Source: Guillardia theta CCMP2712
Lineage: Eukaryota > Protista > Cryptophyta
DNA: 64,000 nt
Reading direction: 5' to 3'
Assembly (NCBI RefSeq): GCF_000315625.1
Contig: NW_005434644.1
Coordinates: 54,775-118,774 of the forward strand
Each line of letters begins with the position of its first letter. Within the stretch, counting starts at the first letter, position 1. The position numbers were made by a program, and so were the translations under genes. The notes under the pieces were generated by a model that ran no database searches, had not been told where the DNA came from, and worked only from the letters and a program-made list of their open reading frames with translations. This document shows, in pieces, positions 26,666 through 39,605 of the stretch.

Positions 26666-28228
26666 ATGAACAACATGCTGTCTTCCAGCCATCCCCTGTC
26701 CCTCCTCTGCCTCCTTGGCATCTTCTGGCAAATACCATCTTCGCACACTCCTCCGCTCCCGTCCCCCCTCCGTGCAGTGCTTCATCTGAAGGGAGGCCAT
26801 CGGCTTCCAGCCCAGCCAAGGAGCAAACTAGGGAAGAGCAGGAGGTTAAGGAGCAAGTTCGATCCAGAGAAGATGTTCGCGCAGATGAAGAACAGGTCGT
26901 TCACAGAGGGTGACCTGCTGATGGAAGAGGACGATGCTCTCTTTCACAACCTGTACTACGGGAACCGGCACAAGGACGAGGTTCTGAAGGACATCAAGGA
27001 GTTTGAGGAGGAACACCCTGAGGTTGTTAGGGAGGAGCGGAACGTGAATCTCGACACGCTTGGGTTGCTCGCGGTGAGGCTTGTGGTTTGCTCAGCCTGT
27101 CAGCGAGGAGAGACGTCAGTTGTTCTAGCATGCATCAGCCAGATACTGTGGGTGTTGGGGAGCTTGTACTTGAGATTTTTTATGTTTGCTTGAGTGGAGT
27201 AGGTTCCCTTTGACGTTTCTGTCTTTCAGGTGGAGAAGTGGAATTATCACATCAAGAGGTACCGGCTTCCGGACTATGACGACGACGATGACGACTCCTC
27301 GACGGCGAGGAGGGAGGCGGAGGAGGCGGAGAAGCGCCTGTACATTGACAATGACGAGACTGAGGAGGATCGGAAGCACAAAAGCCGGGTGTCTCATTTC
27401 TACCTAGCGCAGAGTTATCAGATCGGTTATGCAGTGGATGAGATCAACCATACGAAAGCTTTCCATCACTTCCAAATGTCTGCCATGATGGACCTCCCTG
27501 AAGCCATGACGTGCCTTGGGACCTGCTTCCTTCATGGCTACGGGACAGACAAGGACGTGGCAGAGGCTGTGCGGTGGTACAGCAAGGCAGCAGAGGCTGG
27601 TTGCTCGGAGGGGATGTACAACCTTGCGCTGTGCCTGCAGGACGGGGTTGGAGTGCAGGAGAGCATAGGGATGGCGATACAGTGGATGAATCAGTCAGCA
27701 GCTGACGAGCATGTCGACGCGATGTACGTGATGGCCATGTACCACATGCAGGGAGCAGGCGCGATTGAAAAAAACGAGGAGCTGGCAAATGAAATGCTGA
27801 CCAAGATCGTCGATCGGTTCGATCATCCTGCTTCTCAACTGAGGTAAGCTCGCTGAGGGCCGAGGATTGAAGAGGAGGAGGAGGAGGAGGAGGAGGAGGA
27901 GGAGGAGGAGGGAGGGAGGGAAGAGGAGGCAGGCGAAAGCAGAGTAGAAAGGGTATCAACGAGAACGAGGAAAGGAGAGGGAGAGCAAGGAGGAGGTTAA
28001 ACGGAGCACGAGTGGTGGGGGGCAGGGATGAGGAGTGAAAGAGGAAGGTGGCAGCAGAAGCTGACGTCTTGTTTCAGCCTTGCCAAGAGCTTCTTGCTGG
28101 GACGTGGCACGGAAAGAGACGAGACGATGGCGGTCAAGCTTGCTAAGTTTGCCGCGGGGGAGGAGGAGGCGGAGAAGCTGATAAGCTCGTGGGAGAAAGA
28201 ACGGAGGGTTCTTGCTGAAGGACTGTAA
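26666..28228 (+). CDS. SEL1-like repeat protein with N-terminal hydrophobic leader
   Basis: AMTCLGTCFLHGYGTDKDVAEAVRWYSKAAEAG, GMYNLALCLQDGVGVQESIGMAIQWMNQSA, AMYVMAMYHMQGAG, LAKSFLLGRGTERDETMAVKL. Three exons. Confidence 0.88.
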
Positions 28229-28366
28229 AGTACTGAGCAGAGCAAGAATTGCGATGAGGAGGAGGACTGAGAGGTGAGGGAAAGGGGGAAAGTGGAATGC
28301 AATCTAGAAAAGGAGGACACTGAAGGGAGGAGGAGGGAGGGAGGAGAACGTTCAGGTTGGCACCGT

Positions 28367-29085
28367 CTATCTTCCACCTATTATCCTCATGAAATCAGGA
28401 ACTTCTCTTAACTTGGCCGCGTCTTCCAGCCTCCAGGTGACCTTGACGGGACGAGTCTGCGAGGAGGGAACGTGGAGCTCCTGGATCCGCAGCCGCCCGA
28501 GGAAGACGTAGGGCTGATTCTTGAACCTCGCAAAGAGCAGTGTAGGAGGGATATCGTTCGCGTCCTCTTCCCCTCCTCCCTCCTCCCCTTGCTCTCCTGC
28601 TGGCTCCTCCCCTCCTCCCTCCTCCGCTTCTTGCTCCTCCCCTCCCCCTGCTGCGTGCTCGTGCCATCCGTCCTCTCCTCCTTCAGCTTTCATTTGTCGT
28701 TCCCACTCGAGGATCGTTTTCCGAAGGATGGGGGAGGAGGAGCAGAACTTGATGCTGGCGTACCACGACACCGTCTCCCCGTCTGCTGAGAAGTCGTTGT
28801 TGTACCTGCTCTCCATTCATCCCCTCGTCTTGTACCTCCTCGTCCTCGTCCTCCCTCCTCGTCTCCTCCTCGTCCTCGTTCTCGTTCTCCCTCCTCGTCC
28901 TCCTCTTCCTCGTTCTCCCTCCTCGTCCTCGTCCTCGTCTCTCCCTCCCCTCTGCATGTACAACCGTGCACCTCCTGCCTCCCTCGCCTCCCCCCTGACC
29001 TTCCATGTCCGATGTTGATCAGCAGCACCAGCGCATTTGGCCACTCCAGACAACCTGAGCTATGACGCTCGGAGCAGAGGAAACT

Positions 29086-29119
<34 letters not shown>

Positions 29120-30472
29120 GGAGGAGGAGGAGGAGGAGGAGGAGGAGGAGGAGGAGGAGGAGGAGGAGGAGGAGGAGAAGTCAGATGGTTTGACGGAAAT
29201 GGGCAGGGAGGGCTTACTTGACGTCTGCCTCAGGCCCAGCAAGCTCTCGGATCTGTCATGAAATAAGAAAAGAGAGGGAGAGAAGGAAGGAAAGAGTGGG
29301 AGAGGGAGAGAAGGAGGAGGGAAAACGAGGATCCATGGATTGACTGAAGAGTTGAAAGGAGAGGAGGCGGCTAGAAAAGGAAGGAAGGAAGGAAGGTAAG
29401 TAGGCAGGTGGGTAGATAGAAAGGTAGCTAGGGAGGGAGGTCTCCTACCACCACTGACTTTCCCTTCCCCGCCAGTCTCCTCCCCAAGAGATTCTTCTCG
29501 TCAAACTCCACGAGGTTACAAACTCCTCTGTTCCTCTCCCTCCTCTCTCCTCGCTTGTGACCATCTCCTCTTCCTATCAGCCCTGCTACGCTCATGCCAC
29601 CCTCCTGCTCCTCCTCCCTCCTCCTCTCTCTCTTCTTTTGCTTTCCCTTCCCGCTCTTCTTTGACGACAACCATAGTCTCCTTGCCCGCTCTGCGATCTC
29701 CGGCCCGAGCACGCGGTAGAGCAGGACGAGACACTGCGCGTCTGTAGCGGCGTATCGAATCTGAAGGACAGGAGAGAAGGATTAGGCGCGGGGGAGGAAG
29801 AGTAAAGAAGGAGTAAAGGATGGTGGAGAAGAGAAAAACGGAGGAGGAGGAGGAGGAGGAGGAGGAGGAGGAGGAGGAGGAGGAGGAGGAGGAGGAGGAG
29901 GAGAANNNNNNNNNNNNNNNNNNNNNNNNNNNNNNNNNNNNNNNNNNNNNNNNNNNNNNNNNNNNNNNNNNNNNNNNNNNNNNNNNNNNNNNNNNNNNNN
30001 NNNNNTAGAGTTTGAGTGTGGGTGGAGGGGGGAGGTGCTGATGGTGGTGGTAGTGGTGGTGGTGGAGGAGGAGGAGGAGGTGGTGGTGGTGGTGGTGATT
30101 CAAGCTTCACCTGCATTTCCTTTGACAGCGGATGTCCCAGCAGGCTCTTACAGGCTGCGCTCAGCCCGAAGTTCTGCCTGCTCAACCTCCCTGACGCCAT
30201 CACCATGTGCTAGGAGGAGAGCGTGAGAACCTAACATCGCTTCTTCCCCTCAGTCCTCCCCCTCCCCTCCCCTCCTGTCCCTCTCCTGCTCCCTGGCTCT
30301 TCCTCCTCCTCTGCTGCAGCTGCTCCACCTTGATGTCGACGAACGCATGATGGTCGTCGACGAGCCGCTGAAGTTGCTGGAGGAAGAGGAGGCGAGGAAA
30401 ACTTGACAGCAGCATCTTCATGTCCATCTCGAAGCTGAACCCCAGCTGAACTCCAGCAAGTCACCACCACCA

Positions 30473-30559
<87 letters not shown>

Positions 30560-33533
30560 CTTCTCTCCCTGTCCTCGCTGATGCTCTGATTGAGCATGAC
30601 AGTTGCTCTATCACGAATCGTCTGTTCCTCTCTCCTACCTCCTGCTCTTTCCCTTCCCTCCTTCTCACACCTTGAGAATATCTTCTCGCAACAGGAATGG
30701 TCCTAGAATCTCCTCCAGCGTCCTCGTCGCCTCTTCCTCCTCCTCCTCTCCCCACCGCTGGAACCAGCTCTGCCGCAAGCGATCATGTGAGGAGCACGTG
30801 GAGGAAGTGAGAAGGAATAAAAGTGAGGAGGGAGGAAGGAGGAAGGAGGAGCGGGAGGGGTTCTTTCATTTAAAGAAGAGAGTGGATGGGGAGAGAAGAA
30901 AGAGGGAGGAANNNNNNNNNNNNNNNNNNNNNNNNNNNNNNNNNNNNNNNNNNNNNNNNNNNNNNNNNNNNNNNNNNNNNNNNNNNNNNNNNNNNNNNNN
31001 NNNNNNNNNNNNNNNNNNNNNNNNNNNNNNNNNNNNNNNNNNNNNNNNNNNNNNNNNNNNNNNNNNNNNNNNNNNNNNNNNNNNNNNNNNNNNNNNNNNN
31101 NNNNNNNNNNNNNNNNNNNNNNNNNNNNNNNNNNNNNNNNNNNNNNNNNNNNNNNNNNNNNNNNNNNNNNNNNNNNNNNNNNNNNNNNNNNNNNNNNNNN
31201 NNNNNNNNNNNNNNNNNNNNNNNNNNNNNNNNNNNNNNNNNNNNNNNNNNNNNNNNNNNNNNNNNNNNNNNNNNNNNNNNNNNNNNNNNNNNNNNNNNNN
31301 NNNNNNNNNNNNNNNNNNNNNNNNNNNNNNNNNNNNNNNNNNNNNNNNNNNNNNNNNNNNNNNNNNNNNNNNNNNNNNNNNNNNNNNNNNNNNNNNNNNN
31401 NNNNNNNNNNNNNNNNNNNNNNNNNNNNNNNNNNNNNNNNNNNNNNNNNNNNNNNNNNNNNNNNNNNNNNNNNNNNNNNNNNNNNNNNNNNNNNNNNNNN
31501 NNNNNNNNNNNNNNNNNNNNNNNNNNNNNNNNNNNNNNNNNNNNNNNNNNNNNNNNNNNNNNNNNNNNNNNNNNNNNNNNNNNNNNNNNNNNNNNNNNNN
31601 NNNNNNNNNNNNNNNNNNNNNNNNNNNNNNNNNNNNNNNNNNNNNNNNNNNNNNNNNNNNNNNNNNNNNNNNNNNNNNNNNNNNNNNNNNNNNNNNNNNN
31701 NNNNNNNTCCTGCGGGAAAGATCAAAAGACGAGAGGAGGAGACGCAGAGGAAGAGAAAAGGGAGAAGAGGATGGAAAGAGAAAGGAGTAAGAGGAGGAGG
31801 AAGAACGAGAGGAAATCAGGAAGAGAACGCACTTCGATATCAGACAGTGAAGGTTGCAGGAGGGTGACATTGTGAACTATGAAGTCGATAGTCGAATCCC
31901 TCGCCCTCTGCCTCACCAAGTCAGGACAGGAGAAACTCTTAACTCTCTCCTCTCCTCTGCTCTCCTCTTCATCTCCTCCCCTCTCCCTCTCCCTCTCCTC
32001 CCCTCTCTTCTTCGCACCTCAACTCTCCCTGCCTGCTGCTTCAAAACTCCTCCGACCCGGACCTGTAGGAAACGCTCAGCAGCACATCACAACCTCCTTT
32101 GCTCTCACCATGGAGCCGGTTCTGATTGCCTTGAAAAGTTTTCCCGCCTACTCTTACCGTCAGTCTTGCCCCTCCTCCTCCTCCTCCTCCTCCTGCCCCT
32201 GCTCCTGCCCCTGCTCCTGCCCTTGCCCCTTCCTCCTCCTGCCCCTCCTCTCAACCTCCTCGTCGCCGATGTTTGCCGTCAGCGTCTTGCCAAAGATGAG
32301 CTGCAGAGAGAAGGTCGTCGTCTCCTCCTCCTCCTGCCTCCAGCACCAGCTCCTCCTCCTCCTGATCGACCGGTGCAGACTCCTCGACGACACCAGCCGC
32401 GCTACCTCCTGCCGCATGTCCCGGTGGACGGCAAACCCGAACAGCAGTCGCCGCCCGATCTTGTTAGCAGAGATGAGGCAGAAATCTCCAGTGAGGAATG
32501 TGGAAGGGAGCGTCTCAGGATCTACATCCTTCCATTCCGAGGTGATTTCATACACCTTGTCCGAGCCCGTCTCCTCCCCTGCCTCCTCTTCGTCTCGCTC
32601 CCGCTCCTCCTCCCCGCCGCCTTCCTCCTCCTCCCCTCCCTCCAGCACTTGCCGCACCTTTGTCTTCCCTCCCGTGACTGAGGTGTGGAAACGAGAGTAA
32701 GGAAGGAGGGGCCCCTCCCTCCTCCCCTCCTCCTTCACTCTCCCCACATCCGCTACGACGGCTCCTGTGACGGCCAGCAGGTCCTCCACCTTGATCGACA
32801 GCTCCAGCTCCATTCTCCCGCACCCAACGAACACTCGAGGAGTTCGCAGCACCTCCTCGTCCACGATAGTGAGCATGCTTCTTCTGTGAGCAAAGGGAGG
32901 TATCATTCCTATCCTGTACCCGGTCCACTCCTCCGCGTCCTCCGACGGCGCAAGCTTGACAGAGGCAGCACGGTCCGCTATGGCCATGCTCTCACCCCGC
33001 TCCCTCAGCCTGTCTCTCTTCTGCTTCAGGCACTGACTGAGTTTCTTGATGCTGACTTTCTTGTTCCCGGAGAGCACAACGAGGACAGGATGGTTTCCTA
33101 CCACAAAGACAAGAGACTTGACAACGACGCTACTGTTCACTCCCAGAAGTACCGCCGTGCTCTCCGCGTTCACTTCCTCCTCCTCTCCCCTCTCGACTGC
33201 CACGATTGTGTACTCTACATCCCTGCTCTTGAGGAACCTCTCAACATCACCGACTTCCAAACTATCTTGTTTGCACATGCTGTCTTGGCTCTCTTGCTGA
33301 TCGTTCAAAGTCGAGGTCTCCCATCCTCGCTCGACAGCTTCCGACATCGTCAACGACGACAACACGTTCGATCTTGCCGTCACCGCAACCCTCGGTGCAG
33401 CTCTCAACAGATTTCGAGCCTTCAGCCTGCTCCCAGACTGGAAACTTCTACACCCACTGAGACAGAACGTGTTCCCAGTGTTGATGCTTGCAACAAGTAT
33501 AAGAGCCGCTCTGAAGATACTGAAGGGACTCAT
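28367..33533 (-). CDS. Multidomain YbaK/ProX deacylase + OB-like fold + DEDDy 3'-5' exonuclease + DUF3427-like protein with bipartite leader
   Basis: Signal peptide MSPFSIFRAALILVASINTGNT then F and a basic transit-like segment. YbaK: VVKSLVF...GYRIGMIPPFAH...VFVGCG. OB-like: KIGRRLLFGFAV...LQLIFGKTL. Exonuclease: FLLREDILK-LGFSFEMDMKML, FVDIK, GLSAACKSLLGHPLSKEMQV, IRYAATDAQCL. C-terminal: GCLEWPNALVLLINI...RYNNDFSADGETVSWYAS...LLFARFKNQPYVFLGRL. Two gaps interrupt the model. Confidence 0.72.
30474..30557. repeat. (CTG)n microsatellite in an intron; another at ~12690-12750
   Basis: Direct read. Confidence 0.95.
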
Positions 33534-34683
33534 CGAATGTCCTCAAACTTGTTACACTGATGGGCATCTCATCATTCTTGCTCCCTGAGGCGAGGTCTTG
33601 TCGTGATGATTTCAGTCAGTATCACTGTTCCCATTCAAGCTATATGCCCGCCTGCAATCCTATCAGATTTCCTCGTCCTTGTTCCCGTCCTCGCTCTTCT
33701 CATCCTGAACATCCTGCTCACCATTGTTCCCTCCCTCCTCCCTCCTCCCTCCTCTTTCCTCTCCTCTCCTCTCCTCTCCTCTCTCTCCTCCCTCCTCCCT
33801 CCTCTATCCTGCCCTTCGCTTCCTATCTCTCTCTCCGGTACCTTGGAGAGCAAGAGTCAAACAACAATACTGTCAACAGCCTTCCTGGACCTTCCAATGG
33901 CACAAGTGGGAAAGGCAGTCAGAGTTCTTCACGATTTAAGAAGATCAATTCCTTGGAGACGCCTGCAAAGGTCTGCTTGCAATCATTCCGACATACATGA
34001 TGCAACCTGAAAAACATTCAGGCGATGATTATTCCAGATCACAACGTGTTCATTGAAGCAGAGCTTGGATTGCATGTTCATAATCTAGTGGGTGCAAGGT
34101 GATGATCGATTCTTGAAAGCTTTTATTTTTCATTCNNNNNNNNNNNNNNNNNNNNNNNNNNNNNNNNNNNNNNNNNNNNNNNNNNNNNNNNNNNNNNNNN
34201 NNNNNNNNNNNNNNNNNNNNNNNNNNNNNNNNNNNTGCAGTCGTGTTGTTGACTCAACAGCTCGCTCCATTCAGCGCTCTGTCCATCCATGCTTGATAAG
34301 GTAGAGAGAAAGGGTCATGTGGGACAGGCAGGGGTGATAAGATATAATCAGGGGTGGGGGTGATCGAGGGAGAGTGTGTCCCGATGTTCGGTCTTCTCGC
34401 ACATGTTGATGGGAGGGGAGTAGGGAGGAAGACGAAGACAAGAAGGAGAGGAGGGAGGAGGAGGACAGAGGGAGCAGAGGAGGATGCATGGAGGAAGGGA
34501 GGGAGGGAGGGAGGGAGGGAGGGGAGGAGGCGCCATGAAGAAGATGATTCACTCGGTGAACTCATGAAGATTTTACAAGACACATTAGGCGTTCGACAAC
34601 AACACCCTTAACGACATTCTTCGCTCTCTGTTCCCGAGTTGAGCATGTCAGGAGCAAGACTATCATGACATCTTGACAACGTG

Positions 34684-39605
<4,922 letters not shown>

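What the first reader, a model, noticed from the sequence alone, without database searches (positions are those of the whole stretch)
28367..33533. Plastid-targeted YbaK-OB-3'5' exonuclease-DUF3427-like fusion: candidate tRNA quality-control or decay machine
Seen: one minus-strand exon chain carries a signal peptide + Phe + basic transit-like leader, a YbaK/ProX trans-editing domain (conserved K in VVKSL, GxIPPF loop) and an OB-like fold. It then has a Mut-7/EXD3/RNase D-type DEDDy exonuclease (GF-x-F-x-x-D, YAAxDA) and a C-terminal Y-x-N-x-F...W...LF-x-R...Y-x-FLG domain resembling DUF3427 (SRA/PUA-like). Known: YbaK-family domains deacylate mischarged tRNA, and RNase D-type enzymes trim unacylated tRNA 3' ends. 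Inference: a single protein that recognises (possibly modified) tRNA, removes the amino acid and then degrades or trims the 3' end in a complex plastid. I know of no characterised protein with this architecture.
Basis: partly seen in the sequence, partly recalled or inferred. Interest (0 to 1): 0.75.

Follow-up and report, generated by a model that had tools for sequence, protein, structure and literature searches.

The report
Algal YbaK-OB-exonuclease-SRA fusion enzyme
One expressed gene of the alga Guillardia theta joins a tRNA-editing domain, a strand-binding OB fold, an RNA-trimming exonuclease and a modified-base reader in a likely plastid-targeted protein; green algae have the same uncharacterised combination, and its predicted role in tRNA 3'-end quality control is untested.

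Summary
Spliced contigs from three studies, one of them continuous from 33649 to beyond 28100, and a transcriptome protein (P0004) show one minus-strand gene. It has at least 13 exons with AG/GT borders and encodes 979 codons from ATG 33533 to TAG 28369-28367.

Both assembly gaps hide coding sequence. Gap 30912-31707 hides 93 codons, including the ExoI motif (D538, E540). Gap 29906-30005 hides 13 codons.

The domains are:
- A YbaK/INS editing domain (Pfam 2e-18, Lys139 kept).
- An OB fold, by structure search on a homologue's model.
- A Mut-7/Nibbler-type DEDDy exonuclease with all motifs.
- A C-terminal SRA/DUF3427-like fold, nearest to the SauUSI recognition domain (Z 8.7), with no Pfam sequence match.

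The leader looks like a cryptophyte plastid signal, with Phe23 conserved in Hanusia. The public Guillardia model (394 aa) is truncated.

The full architecture recurs in Parachlorella and in about 45 metagenome-derived proteins. Pleodorina has all but the last domain in its model. A haptophyte protein fuses YbaK with a Mut-7 exonuclease in a different order. I found no paper on either fusion.

The architecture is near certain. The mechanism, deacylation followed by 3' trimming of plastid aminoacyl-tRNA, is inferred at about 45%. A DNA-directed role is the main rival. Another reading of this stretch is on the scan's record.

The parts
33534..33649 (-). Minimum 5' UTR. An in-frame stop lies just upstream of the ATG.
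   Evidence: X1 record 1 starts at 33649. The open frame begins at 33542 and the ATG is at 33533.
32256..33533 (-). Exon 1 (aa 1-426): leader, YbaK domain, acidic linker and the first half of the OB fold.
   Evidence: Continuous ORF with a GT donor at 32255. It is 100% identical to P0001 over aa 1-389 and to P0004 over aa 373-426.
33348..33533 (-). Bipartite plastid-type leader (aa 1-62): a hydrophobic signal peptide, Phe23 at the predicted +1 position, then a basic Ser/Thr-rich stretch with no acidic residues.
   Evidence: Composition count and gap-free correspondence with the Hanusia phi leader, where F23 is conserved. The rule for an aromatic residue at +1 is cited from PMC5443833. No targeting predictor was run.
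32733..33248 (-). YbaK/INS-type aminoacyl-tRNA editing domain (about aa 96-267). K139 lies in VVKSL at 33119-33117, and the GMIPPF loop at 32909-32892.
   Evidence: Pfam PF04073 at E 2.2e-18, 66.9 bits against a cut-off of 25.5. NCBIfam YbaK_EbsC at 82 bits, below its cut-off of 153. The best solved relatives are 1wdv (9.4e-14) and 2cx5, with Lys and the loop aligned.
31833..32501 (-). OB fold (about aa 345-479), split over the end of exon 1 and exons 2 (32147-32109), 3 (32062-32018) and 4 (31907-31833).
   Evidence: The family alignment A3 has an invariant QLIxG..L motif. The AF2 model of the Parachlorella homologue matches the LysRS N-terminal OB fold (Foldseek E 4e-4, prob 1.0) and SSB/PriB/AsnRS (Z 7-8). 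The exon joints appear in X1, X2 and X4.
30912..31707 (-). Assembly gap hiding 279 nt of coding sequence (aa 480-572): the start of the exonuclease domain, including ExoI IGIDAEW (D538, E540).
   Evidence: The contigs carry about 276 letters between 31832 and 30771. P0004 residues 108-200 fill the stretch without a stop and match nowhere else in the assembly.
30111..30769 (-). Exons 5 (30769-30671), 6 (30445-30329) and 7 (30209-30111): the exonuclease core with ExoII (LGFSFEMD, D613).
   Evidence: Joints in three runs, AG/GT borders, and Pfam PF01612 on P0004 at E 2.4e-15.
29906..30005 (-). Assembly gap hiding a 39-nt exon (aa 678-690, VSNWNLRPLADEQ).
   Evidence: The residues come from P0004.
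29449..29760 (-). Exon 8: ExoIII (YAATDA, Y693/D697) followed by a charged low-complexity linker.
   Evidence: There is one K/E difference from P0004.
29218..29252 (-). A 35-nt exon (IRELAGPEADV plus a split codon) that the read layout missed because of repeat masking.
   Evidence: Found by translating the window against P0004, with AG/GT borders.
28367..29083 (-). Exons 9 (29083-29000) and 10 (28805-28367, ending in TAG): an SRA/DUF3427-like domain (about aa 806-979) with an acidic low-complexity insert. Family-invariant residues include Y835, N837, F839, W848, R927, Y933, G937, R938 and D962.
   Evidence: Alignment A2. AF2 model with pLDDT 76. VIA-align: SauUSI 810-953 at Z 8.7, rmsd 3.5, 106 aligned, then AspBHI, ScoMcrA SRA, MspJI, LpnPI and SUVH5. 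Foldseek returns the same set. Atlas: 25 of 30 hits by features are DUF3427, and by shape TM is 0.56/0.70.
28100..28366 (-). 3' UTR. It overlaps the 3' end of the convergent Sel1-repeat gene.
   Evidence: X1 record 1 runs through 28100 and a further 1281 nt. Sel1 Pfam hit on 27230-27844 (+).

Best explanation
This is one nuclear gene of Guillardia theta that encodes a 979-residue protein. The public model, GUITHDRAFT_107601, is truncated at 394 aa.

The protein carries a cryptophyte bipartite plastid leader, then four domains:
- a YbaK/INS-superfamily aminoacyl-tRNA deacylase domain;
- an OB fold of the single-strand/anticodon-binding type;
- a Mut-7/Nibbler-type DEDDy 3'-5' exonuclease with all catalytic residues;
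- an SRA/DUF3427-like domain of the kind that reads a flipped-out base.

Shown here: the gene structure, its expression as one spliced mRNA, the domain identities, the intact catalytic motifs, and conservation of the architecture in green algae.

Inferred mechanism: in the plastid, the enzyme works on RNA 3' ends that carry an amino acid, most likely aminoacyl-tRNA. The OB fold and the SRA-like domain hold the RNA, the latter perhaps by flipping out a base that may be modified. The YbaK domain hydrolyses the aminoacyl ester that would otherwise block a 3' exonuclease. The Mut-7-type nuclease then trims or degrades from the freed 3' end. That would be a deacylation-coupled quality-control or turnover step for tRNA 3' ends.

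The stated confidence of 0.45 is for the inferred mechanism. The one-gene, four-domain architecture I put at about 0.95.
For: One gene:
- A single 4604-nt spliced contig spans all exons, and the same joints appear in two further studies.
- P0004 gives a continuous ORF from aa 373 to 979.
- All exon borders are AG/GT and the frame closes at 979 codons.

Domains:
- tRNA_edit at 2.2e-18, with the Lys and the GxxPP loop aligned to solved YbaK-family proteins.
- PF01612 at 2.4e-15. The best solved relatives are the Mut-7 homologue entries 7jw6 and 7jw2 (4.7e-14), ahead of EXD2 and WRN. D538/E540, D613 and Y693/D697 are present.
- OB fold.
- SRA/DUF3427-like fold.

Conservation:
- The same four-domain order occurs in Parachlorella kessleri.
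- It also occurs in about 45 metagenome-derived proteins of 985-1121 aa.
- The Pleodorina starrii model has the first three domains.
- The cryptophyte Hanusia phi has a partial ORF.

Functional coupling: a second, differently ordered fusion of a Mut-7 exonuclease, a YbaK domain and Mut7-C exists in the haptophyte Diacronema lutheri. The two fusions in different orders suggest the two domain types work on a common substrate.

Chemistry (established knowledge, not tested here): YbaK-family domains hydrolyse the aminoacyl ester on the 3'-terminal ribose of tRNA, and Mut-7/Nibbler enzymes trim RNA 3' ends.

Targeting: the signal peptide, a conserved Phe at +1 and a basic leader free of acidic residues fit the cryptophyte rule for stromal import (PMC5443833).
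Against: - No substrate or activity was tested.
- Every characterised relative of the C-terminal fold reads modified bases in DNA: SauUSI, MspJI, AspBHI, ScoMcrA, SUVH and UHRF1.
- DEDDy domains of this clade also include DNA exonucleases such as EXD2 and WRN.
- The OB fold matches SSB and PriB as well as it matches synthetase anticodon-binding domains.
- The YbaK domain scores below NCBIfam's YbaK equivalog cut-off (82 against 153 bits), so its amino-acid or tRNA specificity is unknown.
- The YbaK-like domain of the haptophyte fusion seems to lack the catalytic Lys. This is by my inspection and no alignment was run.
- Plastid targeting was judged by eye, with no predictor and no localisation data.
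- The OB model was built on a homologue, not on the Guillardia sequence.
Confidence: 0.45

Rival explanations
1. A DNA-directed enzyme. The SRA/DUF3427-like domain reads methylated or otherwise modified cytosine in organellar DNA, or possibly in viral DNA. The OB fold binds single-stranded DNA, and the DEDDy domain resects DNA 3' ends. This would be a eukaryotic, exonuclease-based counterpart of modification-dependent restriction or of plastid-DNA turnover. The YbaK domain would be repurposed as a binding or regulatory module.
For: - All nearest solved folds of the C-terminal domain are modified-DNA readers, and DUF3427 is the SauUSI 5mC/5hmC recognition domain.
- SSB and PriB are the top OB matches by VIA-align.
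- WRN and EXD2 are among the exonuclease's relatives.
Against: - YbaK chemistry has no known DNA substrate, yet its Lys and loop are conserved across the family.
- The closest exonuclease relatives are the Mut-7 homologue entries, by nine orders of magnitude in E-value over EXD2 and WRN.
- The haptophyte fusion adds Mut7-C, which Pfam calls an RNase domain.
- There is no Pfam DUF3427 match, so the ligand may have changed.
Confidence: 0.2
2. An RNA 3'-end trimming enzyme for substrates that are not aminoacylated, such as plastid rRNA, mRNA or small-RNA maturation or decay. The YbaK domain would serve only as a 3'-end or nucleotide-binding module with no deacylase role.
For: - The exonuclease is of the Mut-7 type.
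- The YbaK domain scores below the equivalog cut-off.
- The catalytic Lys is apparently missing in the Diacronema fusion (by inspection).
Against: - Lys139 and the GxxPP loop are kept in all aligned members of this family that cover the domain.
- Such conservation is unexpected for a purely structural module.
Confidence: 0.15
3. An artefact: two or more neighbouring genes merged by read-through transcription or by chimeric contig assembly across the gaps.
For: - The public gene model stops at 394 aa.
- P0004 was called from an internal Met.
- The runs are only guessed to be RNA, and the one run on record as RNA (X19) gave 2 reads.
- X1's contig also runs into the convergent neighbour.
Against: - The contigs lack all introns at canonical borders, so they derive from spliced RNA.
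- The frame stays open for 979 codons with no stop.
- P0004 starts inside exon 1 in the same frame as the YbaK ORF.
- Gene models from independent green-algal genomes and metagenomes have the same order in one protein.
Confidence: 0.03

Closest known systems
Free-standing YbaK/ProXp trans-editing deacylases (INS superfamily; solved examples 1wdv APE2540, 2cx5 TTHA1699, 2dxa/1dbu YbaK)
   Same: The domain is of the same family (Pfam PF04073). The conserved Lys and the GxxPP substrate loop align.
   Different: Those are single-domain proteins of about 150-160 aa. Here the domain is the N-terminal module of a 979-aa protein. It scores below the YbaK_EbsC equivalog cut-off, so its specificity is unknown.
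Mut-7 / Nibbler / EXD3 3'-5' exoribonucleases (PDB 7jw6, 7jw2)
   Same: They are the closest solved relatives of the exonuclease domain (E 4.7e-14). The domain has DEDDy motifs including D-x-E-W and YAAxDA.
   Different: There is no Mut7-C domain here. The domain is flanked instead by YbaK, OB and SRA-like modules. Known members act on small RNAs in the cytoplasm or nucleus, not in plastids.
SauUSI target-recognition domain (DUF3427, SRA fold) and the SRA domains of MspJI, AspBHI, LpnPI, ScoMcrA, SUVH5/6 and UHRF1
   Same: It is the best structural match of the C-terminal domain (Z 8.7 over SauUSI 810-953). The family-invariant aromatic, Asn and Asp residues lie in the same order as the SauUSI pocket residues.
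   Different: - No sequence-level match to PF11907, PF18491 or PF26348.
- Fused to an exonuclease rather than to an endonuclease, helicase or methyltransferase.
- Eukaryotic and probably organellar.
- Ligand unknown.
Diacronema lutheri Mut-7-type protein with an inserted YbaK-like domain (KAG8468512.1 cluster; P0201, P0217)
   Same: It also combines PF01612 and PF04073 in one protein of a plastid-bearing alga.
   Different: The order is exonuclease, YbaK, Mut7-C. It has no OB or SRA-like domain, and the YbaK Lys appears to be replaced. It is uncharacterised.
RNase D / RNase T-type tRNA 3'-end exonucleases
   Same: They are DEDD-superfamily enzymes that trim uncharged tRNA 3' ends (established knowledge). 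There is a weak NCBIfam rnd hit at E 0.035.
   Different: They have no HRDC domains here and are much more distant than Mut-7. None carries a deacylase.

Membership tests
YbaK/INS aminoacyl-tRNA editing domain (Pfam PF04073) | Profile match above the gathering score | tested here: met
   66.9 bits against a cut-off of 25.5, E 2.2e-18.
YbaK/INS aminoacyl-tRNA editing domain (Pfam PF04073) | Conserved catalytic Lys and the Gly/Pro substrate-binding loop | tested here: met
   K139 in VVKSL and GYRIGMIPPF align with the same elements of 1wdv and 2cx5. Both are conserved in the family alignment.
Bona fide YbaK (Cys-tRNA(Pro) deacylase, NCBIfam TIGR00011 equivalog) | Score above the equivalog cut-off | tested here: not met
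   82 bits against 153.25. The green-algal homologues and the nearest stand-alone relatives are also below it.
YbaK/INS aminoacyl-tRNA editing domain (Pfam PF04073) | Deacylase activity on a mischarged tRNA | not testable with these tools
   This needs a biochemical assay.
DEDDy 3'-5' exonuclease (Pfam PF01612), Mut-7/Nibbler subgroup | Profile match above the gathering score | tested here: met
   P0004 scores 57.2 bits against 23.6, E 2.4e-15. The separate exons alone do not reach significance.
DEDDy 3'-5' exonuclease (Pfam PF01612), Mut-7/Nibbler subgroup | ExoI D-x-E, ExoII D and ExoIII Y-x3-D catalytic residues | tested here: met
   D538/E540 are seen only in the transcript-derived protein because they are hidden in the gap. 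D613 and Y693/D697 are visible in the window.
DEDDy 3'-5' exonuclease (Pfam PF01612), Mut-7/Nibbler subgroup | Closest solved relatives are Mut-7 homologues | tested here: met
   7jw6 at 4.7e-14 and 7jw2 at 1.8e-9, against EXD2 at 1e-5 and WRN at 1.6e-5.
Mut-7 proper (exonuclease plus Mut7-C) | C-terminal Mut7-C (PF01927) domain | tested here: not met
   No PF01927 hit in P0004 or in the green-algal homologues. It is present only in the haptophyte fusion.
OB fold, nucleic-acid-binding (PF01336-like) | Profile match | tested here: not met
   There is only a sub-threshold hit in homologue P0096 (14.8 bits against 27) and none in the Guillardia pieces.
OB fold, nucleic-acid-binding (PF01336-like) | Five-stranded OB barrel by structure comparison | tested here: met
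   The model of the Parachlorella homologue, with the Guillardia part in the alignment, matches the LysRS N-domain at E 4e-4, prob 1.0. All 50 top VIA rows are OB folds with Z up to 8.1. The Guillardia sequence itself was not modelled.
DUF3427 (Pfam PF11907) / SRA domains | Profile match to PF11907, PF18491 or PF26348 | tested here: not met
   No hit at E <= 10 for any of 14 family members. No PF11907 hit in the genome. No hit of the family profile against PDB sequences.
DUF3427 (Pfam PF11907) / SRA domains | SRA-type fold | tested here: met
   - VIA-align: SauUSI TRD at Z 8.7, rmsd 3.5, 106 aa, followed by seven further SRA-type readers.
- Foldseek: SauUSI at prob 0.99, with weak E-values of 7e-3 to 0.1.
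- Atlas by shape: DUF3427 clusters at TM 0.56/0.70.
- Atlas by features: 25 of 30 hits are DUF3427.
DUF3427 (Pfam PF11907) / SRA domains | Pocket that accepts a flipped modified cytosine | tested here: inconclusive
   The family-invariant Y835, N837, F839, W848 and D962 could correspond to SauUSI Y831, F841, W868 and D858. No residue-level superposition was available.
Cryptophyte bipartite plastid (stroma) targeting signal | Signal peptide, aromatic residue at +1 of the transit peptide, and a basic hydroxylated transit-like region | tested here: inconclusive
   The pattern is seen by inspection, and F23 is conserved in Hanusia phi. The rule comes from PMC5443833. No predictor and no localisation data were available.

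The most novel reading that the evidence does not exclude
An organellar enzyme family of green algae and cryptophytes that couples hydrolysis of the aminoacyl ester to 3'-5' trimming of the same RNA. It would be gated by an SRA/DUF3427-type reader that has been re-used for RNA, flipping out a tRNA base that may be modified. That would be the first deacylase-exonuclease decay machine for charged tRNA, and the first SRA-class reader shown to act on RNA.
Probability: 0.3. Interest if true: 0.85.

Novelty: new variant of a known kind. Interest (0 to 1): 0.66.

Why it matters
Trans-editing deacylases and tRNA 3'-end exonucleases have been studied as separate enzymes. A conserved fusion of the two, together with two nucleic-acid readers, predicts a pathway in which a charged RNA, perhaps mischarged or damaged, is deacylated and then trimmed by one polypeptide. 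That is directly testable with recombinant protein and with knock-outs in tractable green algae.

It would also place an SRA/DUF3427-class domain in a eukaryotic organelle, next to an exonuclease. So far that class is known as a modified-DNA sensor of bacterial restriction enzymes and chromatin proteins. This is of interest whichever substrate, RNA or DNA, turns out to be correct.

Practically, the public Guillardia theta model (XP_005833378.1, 394 aa) is truncated by two assembly gaps and should be replaced by a 979-aa model.

Tried and rejected
- Pfam on single exons finds only the YbaK domain. The exonuclease exons are too short on their own.
- Pfam at E <= 10 on 14 C-terminal domains, a family profile against PDB sequences, and PF11907 against the whole genome all gave no sequence-level link to DUF3427 or SRA.
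- The OB-region profile against PDB sequences gave only chance hits to eS17.
- A scan of bacterial and archaeal genomes with the C-terminal alignment found no relative.
- The search for homologous proteins with P0004 found only cryptophyte fragments and plant Mut-7-like exonucleases. No further full-length members turned up outside green algae.
- The raw-read RNA run X19 gave only 2 reads, so it says nothing on strand or transcript ends.
- RNase D membership was considered and rejected: the hit is only E 0.035 and Mut-7 is far closer.
- Steps left out: I did not type or join the spliced exons into one protein for any search or fold. Stored proteins P0001 and P0004 were used instead. Because no stored protein covers the whole Guillardia OB region, that fold was modelled on the Parachlorella homologue.
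- No hhalign comparison with a DUF3427 alignment was made, because no DUF3427 sequences were on hand by reference.

Full report
**Organism and locus.**
- Earlier notes of this scan name the genome as Guillardia theta. I verified this: exon 1 is 100% identical to XP_005833378.1 / EKX46398.1, [quoted passage not shown]. That is a 394-aa model (P0001).
- The window is contig C30:54775-118774 of an 87-Mb assembly.
- The scan holds another reading of this same stretch (s1-432869).

**Is it one gene? (the gap test)**
- I laid the contigs of three runs from different studies, plus one raw-read RNA run, on 28100-33800.
- X1 record 1 (4604 nt) lies on the minus strand from 33649 to 28100 in one piece and skips every intron. 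X2 and X4 contigs show the same joints.
- The skipped parts have CT..AC ends on the + strand, which is GT..AG on the gene's strand. The contigs therefore derive from spliced RNA, although the runs are only guessed to be RNA.
- Across gap 30912-31707 the contigs carry about 276 letters that are absent from the assembly. Across gap 29906-30005 they carry 33.
- A whole-library search with exon 1 returned P0004, a 607-aa ORF from an MMETSP transcriptome. It starts inside exon 1 at aa 373, in the same frame, and matches every downstream exon of the window with a single K/E difference.
- After refining the borders to AG/GT, the model has 11 visible exons, plus coding sequence hidden in each of the two gaps:
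  - E1 33533-32256
  - E2 32147-32109
  - E3 32062-32018
  - E4 31907-31833
  - [279 nt hidden]
  - E5 30769-30671
  - E6 30445-30329
  - E7 30209-30111
  - [39 nt hidden]
  - E8 29760-29449
  - a 35-nt exon at 29252-29218
  - E9 29083-29000
  - E10 28805-28367
- That gives 979 codons plus TAG.
- P0004 residues 108-198 match nowhere else in the assembly, and the gene is single-copy.
- Both gaps therefore interrupt coding sequence. The letters on either side are in the same gene and in frame once the hidden exons are counted.
- The raw-read run X19 gave only 2 reads and adds nothing.

**Domains.**

*Leader.*
- Residues 1-22 are hydrophobic and Phe23 follows.
- Residues 24-62 have 0 acidic, 7 basic and 9 Ser/Thr residues.
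- The Hanusia phi orthologue (P0003, 59% identity) lines up without gaps by eye and keeps the Phe at position 23.
- In cryptophytes an aromatic residue at +1 of the transit-like part is needed for import into the stroma (PMC5443833).
- This was judged by inspection only.

*YbaK/INS editing domain (about aa 96-267).*
- Pfam tRNA_edit matches at 2.2e-18.
- The best solved relatives are 1wdv and 2cx5, then E. coli and H. influenzae YbaK. Lys139 and the GYRIGMIPPF loop align with them.
- The domain is below NCBIfam's YbaK equivalog cut-off, as are its green-algal orthologues and the nearest stand-alone relatives. It belongs to the superfamily, but its specificity cannot be named.

*OB fold (about aa 345-479).*
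I therefore modelled the Parachlorella homologue with a 13-sequence family alignment that includes the Guillardia part.
- Foldseek gives the N-terminal anticodon-binding OB domain of LysRS (E 4e-4, prob 1.0), along with SSBs and AsnRS.
- VIA-align gives only OB folds among its 50 rows, including PriB, SSB, editosome OB, AsnRS and PolC, with Z 6.4-8.1.

*Exonuclease (about aa 490-720).*
- PF01612 matches P0004 at 2.4e-15.
- ExoI (IGIDAEW, D538/E540) lies in the hidden 93 residues.
- ExoII (D613) and ExoIII (Y693, D697) are visible in the window.
- The closest solved relatives are the "Exonuclease mut-7 homolog" entries 7jw6 and 7jw2 (4.7e-14, 1.8e-9). NrnC, EXD2 and WRN follow at about 1e-5 to 1e-6.
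- There is no Mut7-C domain.

*C-terminal domain (about aa 806-979).*
- No Pfam or NCBIfam hit was found, even at E <= 10 across 14 family members. There was also no profile hit in PDB sequences and no PF11907 hit in the genome.
- The family alignment has invariant residues in the motifs RYxNxF, SW, LFxR, YVxxGRL and LxD.
- An AF2 model (pLDDT 76, with the acidic insert disordered) finds the same fold class by three routes:
  - VIA-align against 48,161 chains: SauUSI residues 810-953 (Z 8.7, rmsd 3.5, 106 aa), then AspBHI, the ScoMcrA SRA domain, MspJI, LpnPI, SUVH5, KRYPTONITE and SUVH6.
  - Foldseek: the same set (SauUSI prob 0.99, E-values weak at 7e-3 to 0.1).
  - ESM Atlas by shape: DUF3427 clusters at TM 0.56/0.70. 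By language-model features, 25 of 30 hits are DUF3427.
- SauUSI 806-953 is an SRA fold that flips 5mC or 5hmC into a pocket lined by Y831, F841, I842 and W868, with D858 (PMC7913695). DUF3427 is the name of that domain (PMC6765204).
- The fold call is therefore supported, but family membership by sequence is not.

**Relatives.**
- The same order, YbaK - OB - exonuclease - C-terminal domain, is found in Parachlorella kessleri GAB4817431.1 (P0133). It is also found in about 45 metagenome-derived proteins of 985-1121 aa.
- Those metagenome proteins were not assigned to an organism here. My guess from their composition is prasinophyte-like green algae. Their only names are automatic, such as "prolyl-tRNA editing enzyme YbaK/EbsC".
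- The Pleodorina starrii model (P0124) has the first three domains, and its model ends after the exonuclease.
- Hanusia phi has a partial ORF with retained introns.
- A brown-alga protein (Choristocarpus, P0030) has only YbaK and OB, on a short contig.
- A different fusion, exonuclease - YbaK-like - Mut7-C, exists in the haptophyte Diacronema lutheri.
- Land-plant hits are plain Mut-7-like exonucleases.
- Every named carrier of a YbaK-exonuclease fusion is a plastid-bearing alga.

**Mechanism.**
- Shown: one mRNA, four domains, intact catalytic motifs, and conservation of the architecture.
- Inferred from established knowledge:
  - YbaK-family domains hydrolyse the aminoacyl ester on the terminal ribose of tRNA.
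  - Mut-7/Nibbler enzymes trim RNA 3' ends.
  - An aminoacyl group blocks 3' exonucleases.
- The reading that uses all four domains most simply is deacylation followed by 3' trimming of an aminoacylated RNA, most likely plastid tRNA. The OB and SRA-like domains would act as RNA holders or selectors.
- The second, independently arranged YbaK and Mut-7 fusion in a haptophyte supports a shared substrate.
- Against it: every characterised SRA/DUF3427 domain reads modified DNA, and both the OB fold and the DEDDy domain are compatible with DNA. I give the tRNA mechanism about 0.45, a DNA-directed role about 0.2, RNA trimming without deacylation about 0.15, and an assembly or read-through artefact about 0.03.

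**Novelty.**
- Full-text searches for DUF3427, for YbaK with exonuclease and chloroplast, and for trans-editing YbaK fusions in algae found no description of this architecture.
- All four domain types are known, and uncharacterised homologues sit in public databases. I therefore rate this a new variant of a known kind.
- It also yields a corrected gene model for Guillardia.

That step was left out, as described above.

Noticed in passing
window 27230-28228 (+): A convergent neighbour gene encodes Sel1 repeats (Pfam E 4.8e-27). The X1 contig runs from the fusion gene's 3' UTR a further 1281 nt into this gene, so the two 3' ends probably overlap or were merged by an unstranded assembly.
   Followed up: partly
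window 29464-29466 (-), aa 790: The genome encodes Lys where the MMETSP transcriptome protein P0004 has Glu. It is the only difference over 607 residues. It may be a strain or allele difference, or an error.
   Followed up: no
window 28820-29230, 29820-30110, 30460-30560 and 32160-32260: The introns and linkers of this gene are full of long trinucleotide runs, (GAG/CTC)n and (CAG)n. Both assembly gaps sit next to such runs, which probably caused them.
   Followed up: no
P0201 / P0217 (Diacronema lutheri KAG8468512.1 cluster): A haptophyte Mut-7-type protein carries a YbaK-like domain between the exonuclease and Mut7-C. This is a second, differently ordered fusion of the same two domain types. 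Its YbaK Lys seems to be replaced. The 3077-aa NCBI model probably merges several genes.
   Followed up: partly
P0002 (ENA contig, 94% identical) and P0003 (Hanusia phi): Both related cryptophyte ORFs run into retained intron sequence after exon 1. Public protein sets for this gene are therefore truncated in several cryptophytes, not only in Guillardia.
   Followed up: no
window 34681-35790 (+): The upstream neighbour is a 370-aa ORF with a signal-peptide-like start and no Pfam match at E <= 0.001.
   Followed up: no
ESM Atlas row 2: A diatom-only cluster of about 310-aa hypothetical proteins (265 members) shares the SRA/DUF3427-like fold of the C-terminal domain (TM 0.56 by query). Other algae of the red plastid lineage may therefore carry the domain in another context.
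   Followed up: no
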